A DNA stretch of 64,000 nucleotides from Guillardia theta CCMP2712. Its lineage: Eukaryota > Protista > Cryptophyta. The DNA lies in assembly GCF_000315625.1 (NCBI RefSeq), contig NW_005434657.1, forward strand, positions 83,539 through 147,538, written 5' to 3'. Of the stretch, positions 9,473-15,714 are shown in pieces; the stretch's first letter is position 1; the number at the start of each line of letters is the position of its first letter. The notes under the pieces were generated by a model that did not search any database, was not told the origin of the DNA, and was given only the letters and a program-made list of their open reading frames with translations. A program made the position numbers and the translations under genes.

Positions 9473-10343
9473 GGAGATAAACATGCTGATGATGCCCTGC
9501 TAATTTATGTTTAGCTCATGGTCCTCAACCTACCTTCAAACGCACGAGCGATGTTGAGGGTTGAGGTACAACTCATCTTTCCTCTCTTCTGTCTCTCTCC
9601 TCCTCCTCCTCCTCCTCCTCCTCCTCCTCCTCCTTCATCGCTTCACCTCCGTCTCTTCTCCCCTGCGTTCTTATCCTCCAGCAGATGTCAAATGGGCTGA
9701 GCGCTACTCGCAAGGTCTTGGGAAGGGGGAGGCGAGGGGGAGGGATTGACTGGCAGCAGGTGACACAGTCGGACGCGCTTGTGCTGTCATGGGAAGGAGA
9801 ACGGCAGACCGAGGAGAGGAACCTGCAAGAGATTTCTTTGAGGATGAGGTGAAGGAGAGAGTAAGTGGGGAAGCGATCTCAGATTCCGCACAGTCTGGTC
9901 TTGGAGGACGAGGACGAGGACGGGGACTATGGAGGTGGAGATGAGGGATACACTGATATGGTTCCTCGTGTGCAAAACTTGATCTTCGTTGACATCTTGA
10001 CAGATGTCAAAACTTGTCTTCACAAACAGGACTGTCGCAAAGGTGGTCAGAGTGCCGGCGAGGAAACAGTTGGTCTACCTTCTCGTCGCTCGTTTGCTGA
10101 TTGTTCTTGCTTCTCCTAGTCGTGTCAGCCCCACATGCTCCAACATCTTCCTCGACATCGGCACAAACGACGGGTCAAGCATACGGCGATTCTTGCGTCC
10201 TGAGGTGTGACTGGACTGAGAGAATGAGGAAGAAACACAGACAGGAGGAGGAGGAAGAGTAGGAGGAGGAGGAAGAGGAATGATAGAGAGCTGGATAGCG
10301 GAGAATGTGGAAGGGAGGAGATGGAGCAGTCGGCAAAGTACCG
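7314..10343 (+). CDS. Multi-exon secreted/membrane protein with Ig-like beta-sandwich segments and the start of an FkbM-like SAM methyltransferase domain (3' end in gap)
   Basis: Signal-peptide-like MVKFVPTVVVMAVMMASA; exons FLTLISPRDG, GIHQLTVKLID, EISITSPVNGS, LKPGAHILEV (Ig-like); CSNIFLDIGTNDGSSIRRF resembles the FkbM-family motif I. Two gaps interrupt the gene. Confidence 0.45.
9420..9469. repeat. (GAT)n microsatellite, intronic
   Basis: Direct reading. Confidence 0.95.
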
Positions 10344-10524: not shown

Positions 10525-12084
10525 CAGACTCCTGGGCAGCACCTGGAGGAGCTTTCGATCGTCTTGCTCAGCTCATCGAACGCGCAGTGGAAGTTAGCTC
10601 TTCCCCAGCTGTCGTCGTGTCCATGTCCATGGGGGGACCTTTCTTTGCGCTCTTCTGCTCACAGCACGTCTCAGAGGTCTTGACTGCTCTCCTCCCCTCC
10701 ACTCCTCCCTGCCCGCACTTCCTTGTCCTCTATCATCTCCTTCATACATGGCTACTCCACCCCACACTTCTCTCTTCCTCCTTCCCTCCCTTCTCTCTTT
10801 CTCCTTCCTCAGGTGGCCCCTCCATCGCTGCTTCATCTCATTTCCCAGCAGGCTTGGAAACTTCGGCACATTCAAACGTTCGTGTCAGTCTCTGGGGTGC
10901 GGCAGGACCTTTCTTACTTCCTCCCTCCTCACCTTCTCCGCAGGTTTACGGCGGCTCCTCGTCCCCGCTGCTCACTCTCTTCTCCGGCAAGTGGGGCTCG
11001 CTGATCCCGAGCATCCTTCAGCCCTTCAGCCTCAAGACGGTCGGGAGGGGGAGGGCATTTTGATCTCTCCTCTCACTTCACCTCTCCTCTCTCCTCTCTT
11101 CCCTCAGGCCCGAACGTTTGCAAGTCTCCCTTGGCTGCTTCCTTCCGACCGAGTCTTCAGCAGCGATCGGGTTAGATTTCGTTGAAACCACCTCAAGAGC
11201 TCACCAACACCTTCTCTTCCTCCCCCTCACCCCTCCCTTCTCACCCTCGTCCTCATCCCCTCATCCTCATCCCCCTCGCCGTCCTCCCGCAGGTTTGGAT
11301 ACGCACCAAGTCAAGAAACTTCACCGCATCTGAGCTTCCCGAGGCTCTCGAGCTAGCAGGAGCGTACTTCTCCGCAAACCGAACGGTCGAGTGAGCATGG
11401 GTAAGAAGCGACTTGACATCCTTCAACAGCGAGCATTCGCATCCCTCGCAGGTCAAGCGCTCGCGCCAAACGTGAGTAGAGGAGAGGAGGAGGAGGAGGA
11501 GGAGAAGCAGCAGCAGCAGCAGCAGCAGTAGGAGGCTGAACAGTCGAGCAGGTGACGACTTTCTGCTTTTTTGGAGCAAAACTTCCGACAATCGAAGCGC
11601 TTGAATGGAACGAGGAGGAGCTGAGAAGCCCTCCTGACTCCGCCAGCATGGGCATGGGGGATGGGACGGTGGGCAAGAGGACGAGGCCGGATGGTGACTG
11701 AGCAAGAGGCAGGTACTGGCTGAAAGCCTCTCAGCTTGCATGGAGTGGGCGAAAGTTCAACGAATGCCAGTGAAGAACGTGACTTGGTGAAGACTATCTT
11801 GTACCTCTATCCTCTATCTCCCTCCCTTCCTCCCTCCCTCCCTCCCTCCCTCCCTCCCTCCTTGCCCCAACATTCCAACACCTCCTCCGTCCATCTCTTG
11901 CTTCTCTCCCTCCCTTCCCGCATACCTTTTTATCCCCCTCATCCCTTTTTCACTCTCATTTGTCTGCACCTTTGTCTTCTTCCTGCTCTTGATTCTGACT
12001 TCTATCAGGGACTACGTGGCTCACACAGATATGCTCAAGTGGCCGCCAGTCTTCAAGAAATTCTTTGAGATACTCGTGGGGTGA
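10525..12084 (+). CDS. Lecithin:cholesterol acyltransferase / group XV phospholipase A2 family alpha/beta hydrolase (5' part missing in gap)
   Basis: Nucleophile elbow VVVSMSMGG; WKLRHIQTFVSVSG|VYGGS; FASLPWLLPS; APNVTTFCFFG; catalytic Asp GDGTV; catalytic His AHTDML; stop TGA at 12082-12084. Confidence 0.85.
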
Positions 12085-12140
12085 AACAAACACAATCTCC
12101 TCGCTCGAGGAAGCCACTCACAAACTTATCCCTCCCGGCT

Positions 12141-15100
12141 TCAAGTCGCCTCGCTCTTTCCTGGGAGGAAGTCGGAGTCCTTAGGAAGCTGCTTGCCCTC
12201 GTTGAACTCGGCGACGACCCACACGCTGGCCCCATCCTGAAAGCACGTCCTGTACTTGATGGAAGAACGGGAGTCCTTGGAGAGCAGCTTGTTGAGGCGC
12301 TGCTTGAGAACTGGTACGGGGACACCTGACTTCTCGATCTTCTTGAGGTTCAGCTTCTTCACCATGTACAAGACTCCGTCATTCTTGTGCTTCATAGAGA
12401 AAGTCTTGCCCAAGGAAGTTTCCTCAAGGACCGCGGACGAGCTGCTTTCCGGTCAAAAACATCGCGTGCATACAAGGTGGTTACCTGTCCTCGGGGTCGG
12501 GATGATACTCTAGTGAATCAAGAGAAGCAGACAGCTGATGTGGTTTCAACCACTCGGCAGTCTTGTCCATGAGGTGCAAAGCAGCTTCTGACTTGCGCTT
12601 CTTGGCGGCTGCGAGGTCTACAGACGTCATGTCATGCCACAAGAAGGCAAGCTGCTTGCTCTTGTTCGAGCCAGCGCTAGATCGGATGGAGATTTGCAAT
12701 TGGCAATTCACAGCATTGCGTTCCTCGGCAGACAGCTTGAGGGCGGTGGAAGTTCTCAGGAGAGAAGTCTGGATCTCTTTCGCAACAAGGCCTGAGTTGT
12801 CCTCATCCCCCAAAGCAAGAGCAGATTTCATGGAAGCTTGCACAGAGGCAAAGACGTCAGACTTCATCAATTGAGCGATATCCTTGCCCTCGATGTCCTT
12901 CTTTTGACAGTCAAGCAACTTTGTCAATGCCTCGTTGCAAGAGATCACAGTGCCATCTTGGACAATTGCCATCGGGCCATCTACAGCCTCGAGAACAACA
13001 CCGTCGTCTTTCCTTCCCGAACCAACAACAGCATTGACAACGGAAGCAAAAGCCTTGGCAGCGCGAAGGTCACTGCTATTCCAGGCCACGCACGTGGCCT
13101 CGACCTTCTCGGCAAATGGAGTGTAGTCGTGTCTTGGATGCATAGTACCCATTGGCTCATTCCAAATAGCCTTGACTTTGGGGTTGCCAGCCCAACTGAC
13201 CGTGTGCAAGTTCTCAGGGCGGAAGAGAAGGATCATGCTGCTTTCCAGAATTGGGATGCAAATGCAGCCAGCTGCCTTTCGAAGTGAGTTGCTGTCTAGA
13301 TCAGGAATAATGTCCCGTAGCGAGTTAAAGGCCTGTAAGATATTAATTGGCACGTTCGAGTCTCCATATGAGAGTAATACCTGCACTTGTCTTTCTGAGG
13401 ACTGTGCAAATCGCTTCTTCAAAGCCTCAACGATCTTGAAGATTGAATCCTGTGAAGGGAGATCTCCGATGGTCATGAGCTCATTCTGATGATAAATCGC
13501 AGAGCCTAGCCTTGACGTCAAATTGAACCCAACTTCAAAGAATGTACCTTGAAGATCCTCTACAATGTCAGAAACATTTGGGATACCTTCAACCAGTCCT
13601 GCAAGCTTTCCATCGCACATCTTCTTGAAAAGTTGATCGAAAATACTGAAGATTCTTTGGTATTCCATGTGAGATTTCTTCTCATGAACCTTGAGGAGCT
13701 CCAATGTGTAGGCATCGGTCAAGGCAGAGACGGCAACTCTCATCTGAATTGAAGGATGCTTAGCTTGCAAGCTGTGCCCTACCAGCATAGCGTGGAAAGT
13801 GTCCTTTAGGACGATTGGATACGTAATGGAGCTACGCATTCCCCACGCCTATGTATGAGTTAGGCAGTTCCTGAATCGATGGTTCACTGACCCCAAGCTG
13901 CTCCAAATAGCAGCGATGTGATGCTCGGAGAAGGGAAGCACCAAGATTGATATGTTCTCGCTCCAAGTTTGGATCGTTCTGAAGCAATGGCTACTCAGAT
14001 ATGGAAACGGTTTTCTTCATCGGAACATCAGAACAAGACACACGGACTTACGGAAATGATTTTGGCCGGATTCGCTCCTGCGTCATTCACGGTGCTGAAT
14101 CGGATTTTCAAGAACCGCATTCGAACACTTGGGCTCAGGATTTCCTAAACCGCATTTTTAGATCCAGCTCACAAGCACCCAAGAAGTACTTCAGGCCACC
14201 GAAGTCCTTGCCATGAATCTTTGACCACCTTGACCTGTAAAACAATTAATACAATAAAGAAGGTTTCAAGCATTCATTACCCTCCTTTCAGCCTCGACCA
14301 TGGAAGTGCCATCTTCGTAGAAATTGCCCACAAACATGCGATCATAACCCATGATTTTGAAGGCATCCCAGCACAACTGGAAACATACATCCTGATCACA
14401 AACGAGTAGGCAAGAATGATTGATAGATCATACTTGTTGACTCAATTCCAATGGAGTGTGACAGAGGTCTAGGTTCTTGATCGCCACACGAACTTTTGCG
14501 TTGGTCTCAACAAAATCATCACAAGGGTCCAATTCCTCCTGAAAAAATTGAACAAAGAGTCACGCAAAATCTGCAAGGATTTCTTTGCAAAACTTACGAT
14601 GTCTGCAACAAAACCGAACGAGCTTTTGGACAAAACCATATTGACCATCATGCATTGTCCGGGATTAGCTGAAATTGCATATATTATGATTCAAAGAAAG
14701 TTTCAACTTTCTCACCAGAATGCGCGACGGAAAGGGTCACAGGATTTACCAATTGCCCAATTCCATTCAACGAATTGACGGAACTCTCGATACGATGTTT
14801 TTCTTCAAACAAATCCAGAAACGATTTTCCCCTAAAGCACCAATGAGACAAGAAAACGCTCTTTCAAAACCTCTATACAAGAGATCCTGCGCCTTCGCCG
14901 GGAAAAGAATTTCTGCATTTTCACTGCAGGCCTTGATCTTCAGAGAGCCATCGTCATGAAGCAAGAAAAAGACTCCATGAGGCTGAACTGCTCCTGCATA
15001 ATCAAGAACCCTACAGAACAGGAAAAGATCTTCATCAAAGAATATTACAATTCAGTCTGTCCTCCACCTGCAATATTCGTGGATTTGCATGGTAGAAGGG

Positions 15101-15293
15101 ATTCGGCTGTCATCTGCATGGATTCCTGCTAAGATTGTGAGCGAGAAGTCTGGCAAGGCTTTCTTGAATGACCTCCATACTCCTTGGAGATCCCCTTAGC
15201 AAAAGGTTCGCTGGATACAAGTCAGAGATCATGTCCAGCATTGAATACACCTGCTCACCTCACACGAACGTCAGGCTGAAGAGAAGCAGCCAT
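12141..15293 (-). CDS. Phytochrome-eukaryotic kinase hybrid (cryptophyte PEK-like): nPAS-GAF-PHY-PAS-truncated Ser/Thr kinase N-lobe; 13 exons
   Basis: Spliced translation: GAVQPHG..KIKACSENA..LLGKSFLDLF (nPAS); GYDRMFVGNFYEDG..SWQGLRWPE..LLRASHRCY..MLVGHS (GAF, Cys codon 13910-13912); LFRPENLHTVSWAGNP..MHPRHDY..AWNSSDL (PHY tongue); GTVISCNEALTKLL..IEGKDI (PAS); LGKTFSMKHKNDGVLYMVKKL..IKYRTCFQDGASVWVVAEF (kinase N-lobe and hinge), then stop. Confidence 0.92.
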
Positions 15294-15714
15294 GGTACTC
15301 GTGAGATTCTGGAGAGAGTTCATCTGAAGTGCACGAGTAAGCTTTCGATGATTCCCCGATGAGGAAGAGTCATCAGGACGAGAGGGGATCATGGGAATGA
15401 GGAAGCATGCATGATGAAACAAGGAAAGCAAGGCTGGTTGACGCCTAGCGTCCTAATAATGGGTGAAATGCTGGGTCAGGAGCAGCTAAAACGTGCTACT
15501 GGAACAAAGCCTCCAAACTTGCAGGAGCAACATAGAATGGAGTTGACATGAGATCATTGCAGGTTCAGACAAGACATGCTGATGCGGAAAGGAGAAGAAG
15601 ATGCATTGACGGCACTGGAGGCGTCAGAGCTGCAGGAAGACAGAAGGGGGGAGGATGCGACGAGTTGCGGGTTGGACATGCCGGGGGTCGCAGGAGGGTC
15701 GGAACTAGCACAGG

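What the first reader, a model, noticed from the sequence alone, without database searches (positions are those of the whole stretch)
13120..14330. Phytochrome keeps the bilin-attachment Cys but has lost most photoconversion residues: candidate non-switching bilin sensor or natural fluorescent protein
Seen after manual splicing and by-eye alignment: the GAF Cys is present (LRASHRC, codon 13910-13912), as are the DR Arg, the LR Arg and the GH His. However, the following His is Tyr (CH->CY); the Cph1 Tyr263-equivalent is Gln (CHLQY->CYLEQ); PATDIP reads PEEILS (Asp->Ile, 14133-14141); the Cph1 Tyr176/phyB Tyr276-equivalent is Gly (RVMVYKF->RMFVGNF, 14326-14328); and the PHY tongue PRxSF reads PRHDY (13123-13137). 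Established: the DIP Asp, axial His, Tyr176 and PRxSF are needed for Pr/Pfr photochemistry, and Asp or Tyr176 mutants of phytochromes are typically locked or fluorescent. Inference: an intact ORF with a conserved fold and Cys but coordinated pocket substitutions suggests a re-purposed receptor. It could sense cryptophyte bilins (PEB/DBV-type) or plastid tetrapyrrole status, or have a non-red spectral cycle, rather than being a decaying gene.
Basis: partly seen in the sequence, partly recalled or inferred. Interest (0 to 1): 0.85.

Follow-up and report, generated by a model that had tools for sequence, protein, structure and literature searches.

The report
Blind, kinase-less phytochrome kept by selection
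The alga Guillardia theta expresses and strictly conserves a phytochrome-derived protein that keeps the pigment-attachment cysteine but has lost most residues needed for red/far-red switching and nearly all of its kinase output, so it is most likely a light-blind regulatory relative of a photoreceptor, not a dying gene.

Summary
The gene is GUITHDRAFT_104500 (minus strand, 15 exons, 849 aa from the first ATG or 826 aa from the conserved ATG). RNA contigs from three studies support every splice junction around the motifs.

Kept: Cys319, Arg314 and His350. Changed, in Cph1 numbering: Tyr176 to Gly, Asp207 to Ile, His260 to Tyr, Tyr263 to Gln, and PRxSF to PRHDY. I also find Tyr203 to Trp, Arg222 to Ser and Met267 to Trp.

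Of 40 columns that are at least 85% conserved in 99 phytochromes, this protein breaks 17 (others: median 1, maximum 9). Fifteen of the 17 lie in the GAF domain.

It is not decaying:
- dN/dS is 0.07 against a 95%-identical environmental relative, with no amino-acid change in GAF or PHY.
- Hanusia phi has an 83%-identical ortholog with the same pocket and the same end.

The protein belongs to a long-branched offshoot of the cryptophyte phytochrome-kinase (PEK) clade. It ends after a kinase N-lobe stub, so it has no catalytic output. A sister lineage has lost the Cys.

Best reading (0.5): a non-photoswitching, non-catalytic pseudo-phytochrome. I lean towards it still binding a bilin. Bilin binding, fluorescence and partners are untested. 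It is a new variant of a known kind. Another note of this scan on this window (s1-444000) already flagged the truncated kinase.

The parts
12047..15690 (-). Transcript of the phytochrome-like gene (GUITHDRAFT_104500). It has 15 exons and 14 GT-AG introns of 42-73 nt. Exons: 15690-15259, 15210-15173, 15125-15068, 15010-14879, 14831-14716, 14668-14598, 14538-14434, 14376-14281, 14234-14190, 14144-14052, 13978-13892, 13848-13548, 13505-13381, 13332-12485, 12441-12047.
   Evidence: Joints appear in RNA contigs of runs X1, X2 and X3 (three studies). Non-templated poly(A) is seen at about 12046-12047 in raw reads of X21. Intron ends were checked. The 5' end is a lower bound.
12141..15392 (-). Coding sequence: 849 aa from the first in-frame ATG (15392), or 826 aa from the ATG at 15323, where conservation with Hanusia phi begins and the annotation starts. 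Stop TGA at 12141-12143.
14503..15006 (-). N-terminal PAS (PAS_2) domain, residues 79-195, spliced.
   Evidence: Pfam PAS_2 scores 36 bits on P0151.
15070..15072 (-). Cys76 in the N-terminal extension (EYCRV.DYAG). It is shared with the sister lineage P0004 and absent from canonical PEKs.
   Evidence: Its role is unknown.
13669..14502 (-). GAF domain, residues 196-385, spliced. Its chromophore pocket is heavily remodelled.
   Evidence: HMMER alignments to solved phytochromes. AF2 gives pLDDT 89, and Foldseek gives TM 0.74-0.78 to Pr-state sensory modules. Fifteen of 24 near-invariant GAF columns are changed.
14326..14328 (-). Gly235 at the Cph1 Tyr176 / phyB Tyr276 position.
14133..14198 (-). 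WPEEILS in place of YPxxDIP, split by intron 14189-14145. Trp263 replaces Tyr203, Ile267 (14139-14141) replaces Asp207, and Ser269 replaces Pro209.
14094..14096 (-). Ser282 at the Cph1 Arg222 position (a propionate anchor). An Arg lies two residues upstream (Arg280).
   Evidence: The register is fixed by Phe276 and Asp286.
13898..13927 (-). RASHRCYLEQ. Arg314 (Arg254) is kept and Cys319 (Cys259, 13910-13912) is kept. Tyr320 replaces His260 and Gln323 replaces Tyr263.
13774..13776 (-). His350, the kept equivalent of Cph1 His290. The next His is Ser.
13009..13668 (-). PHY domain, residues 386-575, spliced. The tongue has WAG (13186-13194) kept and PRHDY (13123-13137) in place of PRxSF.
   Evidence: Pfam PHY scores 77-79 bits. 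Fourteen of 16 near-invariant PHY columns are kept. AF2 draws the tongue as a beta hairpin.
12514..13008 (-). Single PAS domain after PHY, residues 576-740.
   Evidence: Pfam PAS_9 and PAS hits. Foldseek matches to FixL and CLOCK PAS domains.
12144..12425 (-). Kinase N-lobe stub, residues 756-849. The Gly-rich loop is degenerate (EETSLG), the beta-3 Lys778 is kept, and the alpha-C Glu is lost. The chain ends at the hinge, with no C-lobe, HRD, DFG or RING.
   Evidence: Pfam Pkinase scores 15 bits over positions 11-85 of 263. AF2 gives the topology b1-b2-b3-aC-b4-b5 at pLDDT 80-88, and Foldseek matches the PKA N-lobe. The Hanusia ortholog has the same end.

Best explanation
The gene encodes a pseudo-phytochrome. 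It is a fast-diverged paralog of the cryptophyte phytochrome-kinase hybrids (PEK) and keeps the PAS-GAF-PHY-PAS fold. It can no longer run a Pr/Pfr photocycle, and it has no catalytic output, because its kinase is cut down to an N-lobe stub.

Shown:
- It is transcribed and correctly spliced.
- It is conserved in Hanusia phi and in an environmental relative.
- It is under strong purifying selection, strongest in the GAF domain.

Inferred:
- The residues that hold rings A to C of a bilin are largely kept: the attachment Cys, Arg254, Ser272, Thr274 and His290 equivalents.
- The D-ring cage and the GAF-tongue coupling residues are replaced: Tyr176, Tyr203, Tyr263, Met267, the Asp207 side chain, His260 and PRxSF.
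- So the protein probably still takes up a bilin but cannot convert. In this alga the bilin would most plausibly be phycoerythrobilin, which has no 15,16 double bond to isomerise.
- It would then act as a light-independent, possibly bilin-dependent, non-catalytic partner of other signalling proteins, most plausibly the canonical PEKs. Contact would be through the usual phytochrome dimer interface, the PAS domain and the conserved N-lobe stub.
For: Gene model and expression:
- One search gives 14 joints in contigs of three studies and poly(A) reads.
- One search gives one open frame.

Residue equivalences:
-.
- One search counts 17 of 40 near-invariant columns broken, against a median of 1 elsewhere.
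- Fifteen of the 17 lie in GAF (Fisher p 0.003).

Selection:
- Exons differ by 2.8% and introns by 9.0% from the relative's contig L006, and all indels lie outside the CDS.
- dN/dS is 0.07, p about 4e-22, with 0 of 27 changes in GAF plus PHY being non-synonymous.
- The Hanusia phi ortholog is 83% identical overall and 95% in GAF, with the same pocket and the same truncated end.

Origin:
- This gene, Hanusia and P0004 form a 100/100 clade inside a 100/100 PEK clade, with stems of 0.71 and 1.05 substitutions per site.

Output loss:
-.

Fold kept:
-.

Genomic context:
- Canonical paralogs sit in the same genome.
- Only two bilin-reductase loci are found, matching the described GtPEBA and GtPEBB (PMC6755814).

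Literature on the lost residues:
- The Cph1 Tyr176-to-His variant raises fluorescence and uncouples the chromophore from the tongue.
- Asp207 pairs with Arg472 or Ser474 of PRxSF.
- The Tyr263-to-Phe variant raises fluorescence (all PMC11924222).
Against: - No biochemical data exist for this protein or for any cryptophyte phytochrome in the library searched.
- The sister lineage P0004 has Ser at the Cys position, so the Cys is not conserved across the clade.
- Arg222 and His260 are also lost here, and the Pfam GAF model fails on this protein. Bilin binding may therefore be gone.
- The partner-binding role is pure inference. No interaction was tested.
- Cys conservation among relatives that are 83-97% identical carries little weight on its own.
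Confidence: 0.5

Rival explanations
1. It is a bilin-free pseudo-receptor. The GAF pocket no longer holds any tetrapyrrole. The protein is kept for a structural or regulatory role, for example as a decoy or dominant-negative dimer partner of PEKs, or as a sensor of another small ligand or of redox. The retained Cys would be incidental or redox-active.
For: - Seventeen of 40 near-invariant columns are broken, including Asp207, His260 and Arg222.
- The Pfam GAF model does not hit the protein.
- The sister lineage P0004 lacks the Cys.
- Two Trp residues and a Phe were introduced at pocket positions early in the clade.
- The same genome holds a second phytochrome-like gene without Cys, DIP or tongue.
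- Precedents: charophyte PHYX1 lacks all known bilin Cys (PMC4525182). The Rhodopseudomonas RpBphP4 variant that lost its chromophore and senses redox is cited from my own knowledge and was not found in the library.
Against: - GAF is the most strongly conserved domain: 95% identity to Hanusia, and 0 non-synonymous against 17 synonymous changes to L006.
- The residues that contact rings A to C are kept: Cys259, Arg254, Ser272, Thr274 and His290 equivalents.
- In model phytochromes, single substitutions at the lost positions do not abolish bilin attachment (my own knowledge).
Confidence: 0.3
2. It is a still-photoactive sensor with a non-canonical photocycle. For example, it could have a different colour range, a second-Cys chemistry, or biliverdin bound through the clade-specific N-terminal Cys76.
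For: - Algal phytochromes are reported to be spectrally diverse (stated in PMC4525182).
- Cys76 in EYCRV.DYAG is shared with P0004 although the surrounding N-terminus is otherwise only about 26% identical.
- Dual-Cys phytochromes exist, and one (9jry) is the best PDB sequence match (PMC11880981).
Against: - Asp207, His260, Tyr176 and Tyr263 are all missing together. No characterised photoactive phytochrome known to me lacks all four.
- Cys76 sits two residues closer to the QPHG motif than the bacteriophytochrome Cys (for the register; the spacing is from my own knowledge).
- There is no output domain to transmit a light signal.
Confidence: 0.12
3. It is a decaying gene or an annotation artefact.
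For: The pocket, the kinase and the Pfam GAF signal are all degraded. The public gene model is wrong in three places.
Against: - The 849-codon frame is intact across 14 correctly spliced introns.
- dN/dS is 0.07, and indels occur only outside the CDS.
- The ortholog in another genus has the same architecture.
- Expression is seen in runs of four studies.
Confidence: 0.02

Closest known systems
Cryptophyte phytochrome eukaryotic kinase hybrids (PEK; Duanmu et al. 2014, Li et al. 2015, PMC4525182)
   Same: The sensory module nests inside the PEK clade. Both have a single PAS after PHY, followed by sequence homologous to the PEK kinase N-lobe. The gene is very likely one of the three 'G. theta PEK' entries listed without identifiers in the supplement of PMC4525182.
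   Different: There is no kinase C-lobe and no RING. The chromophore pocket is remodelled, whereas canonical PEKs, including the G. theta paralog on contig C31, keep DRVM.Y, YPATD.P, H.CH.EY and PRASF.
P0004/P0152, an MMETSP and Logan transcript of an unnamed eukaryote (926 aa)
   Same: It is the sister lineage (100/100). It shares the derived Trp at Tyr203, Gln at Tyr263, Trp at Met267, Tyr in PRxSY, the N-terminal YC(K/R)V motif, and loss of kinase catalytic motifs.
   Different: It keeps Asp207, Arg222 and both His of CHH. It has Trp, not Gly, at Tyr176, Ser instead of the bilin Cys, and a nearly full-length pseudokinase with THGN for HRD and DLG for DFG.
Laboratory variants at this Tyr: Cph1 Tyr176-to-His and plant phyB Tyr276-to-His
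   Same: The same Tyr position is substituted. In those variants photoconversion is very inefficient, fluorescence rises, and signalling becomes light-independent (PMC11924222).
   Different: Those are single engineered substitutions in otherwise intact receptors with working outputs. Here the residue is Gly and at least sixteen other near-invariant positions are changed in a natural, conserved protein.
Phytochrome relatives that have lost bilin cysteines (charophyte PHYX1, PMC4525182; RpBphP4 redox-sensing variant, own knowledge)
   Same: They are natural phytochrome-fold proteins retained after loss of canonical light sensing.
   Different: They lack the Cys and keep a histidine-kinase output. 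This protein keeps the Cys and lacks any catalytic output.
Dual-Cys bacteriophytochromes (FiDCB, 9jry; PMC11880981)
   Same: FiDCB is the best PDB sequence match. Both have a Cys in the N-terminal extension and in GAF.
   Different: DCBs are photoactive red/far-red sensors with intact Asp, His and Tyr. The N-terminal Cys here is in a different register.

Membership tests
Phytochrome superfamily (knotted PAS-GAF-PHY sensory module) | PAS_2, GAF and PHY domains in that order | tested here: met
   Pfam PAS_2 scores 36 bits and PHY 77 bits. GAF is shown by HMMER alignment to solved phytochromes (E 1e-18 to 1e-23) and by the AF2 model with Foldseek (TM 0.74-0.78). The Pfam GAF model itself gives no hit.
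Phytochrome superfamily (knotted PAS-GAF-PHY sensory module) | Bilin-attachment Cys in GAF (Cph1 and plant type) | tested here: met
   Cys319 aligns with Cph1 Cys259. Actual attachment was not tested.
Phytochrome superfamily (knotted PAS-GAF-PHY sensory module) | Conserved photochemistry residues: Tyr176, Asp207 of DIP, His260 and Tyr263 | tested here: not met
   They read Gly, Ile (Thr in Hanusia), Tyr and Gln.
Phytochrome superfamily (knotted PAS-GAF-PHY sensory module) | Tongue motifs W(G/A)G and PRxSF | tested here: inconclusive
   WAG, Pro and Arg are kept. Ser-Phe is replaced by Asp-Tyr.
Phytochrome superfamily (knotted PAS-GAF-PHY sensory module) | Reversible photoconversion of a bound bilin | not testable with these tools
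   This needs recombinant holoprotein spectroscopy.
PEK (phytochrome eukaryotic kinase hybrid) | Sensory module monophyletic with cryptophyte PEKs | tested here: met
   The ML tree places it in a 100/100 clade.
PEK (phytochrome eukaryotic kinase hybrid) | Complete Ser/Thr kinase domain after a single PAS | tested here: not met
   Only the N-lobe is present, and the stop falls at the hinge. HRD, DFG and APE are absent. RNA and poly(A) reads confirm the end.
PEK (phytochrome eukaryotic kinase hybrid) | C-terminal RING finger (present in many PEKs) | tested here: not met
   There is no RING hit, whereas P0171 has one.
Fluorescent, non-switching bilin proteins (phytofluor-like) | Covalent bilin adduct with high fluorescence and no photoconversion | not testable with these tools
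   The only evidence is the presence of the Cys and the loss of the switching residues. No ligand modelling for bilins is available.

The most novel reading that the evidence does not exclude
This protein is a natural, permanently 'dark' bilin receptor. It would covalently capture a plastid-made 15,16-dihydrobilin (PEB or DBV) in a D-ring pocket rebuilt for it. It would be intrinsically fluorescent and non-switching. It would report bilin supply to cytosolic PEK signalling by pairing with the kinase-active paralogs. That would make it a dedicated sensor for retrograde bilin signalling.
Probability: 0.15. Interest if true: 0.85.

Novelty: new variant of a known kind. Interest (0 to 1): 0.6.

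Why it matters
Phytochromes are defined by light-driven switching coupled to an output enzyme. This is a natural family member that has lost both hallmarks yet is expressed and held almost unchanged by selection. A phytochrome fold therefore seems to have a light-independent job here.

If it still binds a bilin, it would be a candidate for the long-sought kind of protein that senses bilins as metabolic signals. It would also be a natural scaffold for fluorescent or non-switching bilin tags.

If it binds none, it is a clean example of a pseudo-receptor that may tune its active paralogs.

Either way it gives cryptophyte phytochrome biology, which has no biochemistry in the literature I could search, a concrete and cheap first experiment. 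The work also corrects the public gene model.

Tried and rejected
- **Naive ORF-based splicing.** RNA joints replaced both.
- **Alternative exons.** I looked for exons that would restore DIP or CH..Y in 13850-14400. There are none. The only DVP lies in a spliced-out intron at the wrong place.
- **Pseudogene reading.** Rejected.
- **More clade members.**
  - A profile search with A1 gave no new member.
  - The exhaustive representative search showed just one hit below 1e-30, a fragment from a near-identical relative.
- **Primary PEK papers.** PMC3956157, PMC4226090 and PMC5483197 are not held. I could not check whether they comment on this paralog. No held paper names its accessions.
- **Folding the RNA-corrected full-length protein.** I folded P0151 sub-ranges instead. 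These are identical to the corrected model in GAF but carry two retained-intron inserts in PHY.
- **Pocket geometry.** No bilin ligand and no model coordinates are available, so pocket volume and Cys geometry could not be examined.
- **Complex prediction.** Not used. The partner idea is a hypothesis, and paralogous dimers would pass for trivial reasons.
- **N-terminal Cys in Hanusia.** This cannot be read, because that EukProt model is mis-spliced there.
- **Species of P0004.** Not identified.
Full report
**Where and what**

The window is contig C17, 83539-147538, of an 87.1-Mb assembly with 669 contigs. The protein cluster look-up names the gene product as EKX49539.1 / XP_005836519.1, GUITHDRAFT_104500, a 'hypothetical protein' of Guillardia theta CCMP2712 (P0151). 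The gene lies on the minus strand.

**Gene model**

I laid Logan contigs of three RNA-type runs from three studies, plus raw RNA-seq reads of a fourth study, on 11900-15700.
- The contigs show 14 joints, all CT..AC on the plus strand, which is GT-AG on the minus strand.
- Raw reads carry non-templated T runs at 12046-12047. These mark a poly(A) site at a place with no genomic A run.
- The spliced transcript has one long frame: ATG at 15392, TGA at 12141-12143, 849 aa.
- Conservation with the Hanusia ortholog starts at the second Met (15323), which is also the annotated start. The mature protein is therefore probably 826 aa.
- The public model P0151 (821 aa) omits 35 aa of the PAS domain and retains two in-frame introns.
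- None of these corrections touches the motifs in the finding.

HMMER alignments to solved phytochromes and a MAFFT alignment with canonical PEKs, a plant phyB and a bacterial phytochrome give the equivalences below in Cph1 numbering. They are ungapped between anchor residues.
- Changed: Tyr176 to Gly235, Tyr203 to Trp263, Asp207 to Ile267, Pro209 to Ser269, Arg222 to Ser282, His260 to Tyr320, Tyr263 to Gln323, Met267 to Trp327.
- Changed in the tongue: PRxSF reads PRHDY.
- Kept: Arg254 as Arg314, Cys259 as Cys319, Ser272 and Thr274, His290 as His350, and WAG in the tongue.

Quantitatively, 40 columns are at least 85% conserved in 99 other phytochromes.
- This protein and its Hanusia ortholog each break 17 of them. 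The sister protein P0004 breaks 13. All the others have a median of 1 and a maximum of 9.
- Fifteen of the 17 changes fall in the 24 GAF columns and only 2 in the 16 PHY columns (Fisher p 0.003).
- The remodelling is therefore aimed at the chromophore pocket and not at the fold.
- An AF2 model of GAF-PHY is confident (pLDDT 89, pTM 0.87). It superposes on Pr-state sensory modules at TM 0.74-0.78.
- The Pfam GAF model no longer scores the domain, although it scores P0004 and a canonical PEK.

**Not decaying**

A 3-kb environmental contig (L006, ENA) is 95.3% identical over 14851-11852.
- Exons differ by 2.8% and introns by 9.0%. Every indel lies in an intron or downstream of the gene.
- Nei-Gojobori dN/dS is 0.07 (13 non-synonymous against 49 synonymous differences, p about 4e-22).
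- All 27 differences in GAF plus PHY are synonymous.

Hanusia phi has an ortholog (P0153, 83% identical).
- It has the same Gly, Trp, Ser, Cys-Tyr..Gln and PRHDY residues and the same C-terminal end.
- The one pocket difference is Thr for Ile at the former Asp207 site.
- Identity by domain: GAF 95%, N-lobe stub 92%, PAS_2 91%, PHY 90%, second PAS 83%.

**Origin**

In an ML tree the gene, its Hanusia ortholog and P0004 form a 100/100 clade. P0004 is a 926-aa transcript found in MMETSP and in at least 24 Logan contigs.
- The clade sits inside the 100/100 cryptophyte PEK clade.
- Its stem branches are 0.71 and 1.05 substitutions per site, against 0.1-0.7 for canonical PEKs.
- The pattern is fast divergence followed by tight constraint.
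- P0004 shares Trp203, Gln263 and Trp267, but it keeps Asp207 and Arg222 and has Ser instead of the bilin Cys.
- The same genome keeps canonical pockets in the paralogs on C49 and C31. It also has a second degenerate phytochrome-like gene on C66.
- Li et al. list 'G. theta 1, 2, PEK1, PEK2, PEK3' without identifiers (PMC4525182 supplement). This gene is very likely one of the PEKs.
- No held paper names its accessions or characterises any cryptophyte phytochrome.

**Output**

After a single PAS domain the protein continues into sequence that aligns with the PEK kinase from the Gly-rich loop to the hinge, and there it stops.
- The Gly loop reads EETSLG, the beta-3 Lys is kept, and the alpha-C Glu is lost.
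- There is no C-lobe and no RING.
- AF2 folds the stub as b1-b2-b3-aC-b4-b5 at pLDDT 80-88, and Foldseek matches it to the PKA N-lobe.
- The stub has dN/dS 0.066 and is 92% identical in Hanusia, so it is functional as a structure and not as an enzyme.
- P0004 has a longer but also catalytically dead kinase, with THGN for HRD and DLG for DFG.
- Another note of this scan on this window (s1-444000) flagged the same truncation.

**How it most likely works**

Established background:
- The Asp207 side chain pairs with Arg472 (Pr) or Ser474 (Pfr) of PRxSF.
- Tyr176 couples isomerisation to tongue refolding.
- Substituting Tyr176 with His, or Tyr263 with Phe, raises fluorescence and cripples conversion (all PMC11924222).
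- From my own knowledge, His260 and Asp207 stabilise the protonated chromophore. Single substitutions at these sites generally still allow bilin attachment.

Inference:
- With all of these gone together, a Pr/Pfr cycle is very unlikely.
- The kept residues are those around rings A to C and the propionates. The replaced residues form the D-ring cage and the link to the tongue.
- The genome shows only two bilin-reductase loci, matching the described GtPEBA and GtPEBB (PMC6755814). The ethylidene-bearing bilin on hand is therefore probably PEB, which cannot isomerise at C15.
- I therefore favour a non-switching protein that still binds bilin and acts through protein contacts, most plausibly with the active PEKs (0.5).
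- Rivals are a bilin-free pseudo-receptor (0.3), an unusual photocycle that may involve the clade-specific Cys76 (0.12), and decay (0.02).
- The weight on the bilin-free rival comes from the Cys loss in P0004, the losses of Arg222 and His260, and the failed Pfam GAF match.

**Verdict**

- 'Bilin sensor or fluorescent protein' remains an open and testable idea.
- This is a new variant of a known kind: a PEK-derived pseudo-phytochrome.
- Interest 0.6.

Noticed in passing
window 11787-12008 (+ strand) and 12009 upward: A convergent plus-strand gene has a GT-AG intron at 11787-12008, and its next exon overlaps the 3' end of the phytochrome-like gene. This is why the unstranded RNA contigs run past the minus-strand poly(A) site and join to 11756-11785.
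   Followed up: partly
window 15070-15072 (Cys76); P0004 residue 56: A Cys in the N-terminal extension (E/D-Y-C-R/K-V-x-D-Y-A/P-G) is shared by this gene and its sister lineage. Canonical PEKs have Ala or Thr at that position. It lies two residues closer to the QPHG motif than the biliverdin-binding Cys of bacteriophytochromes.
   Followed up: partly
L003 1285-2925 (minus), G000 contig C66: This is a second degenerate phytochrome-like gene in the same genome. It has a 546-aa open frame with a PHY match but no DIP motif, no bilin Cys and no tongue. It may be the 'blind phytochrome with intact H-box' of scan note s1-437434.
   Followed up: partly
window 13506-13547, 13333-13380 and 14598-14737: The public protein model XP_005836519.1 retains two in-frame introns (14 and 16 aa). 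It also skips 35 aa of the PAS domain that the RNA contigs include.
   Followed up: yes
L006 (ENA metagenome contig, 3007 nt): An environmental contig carries a wild relative of this gene at 95.3% nucleotide identity. A close Guillardia-like organism is therefore present in that sample.
   Followed up: partly
window about 10200-10330: An assembly gap (a run of N) is flanked by low-complexity repeats coding LPPS, GGRE and poly-acidic stretches, between 9300 and 11900.
   Followed up: no
window 15393-15690: The RNA-supported 5' leader is at least 298 nt long and contains upstream ATGs, for example at 15679 and 15577. The true transcription start and any uORF use were not resolved.
   Followed up: no
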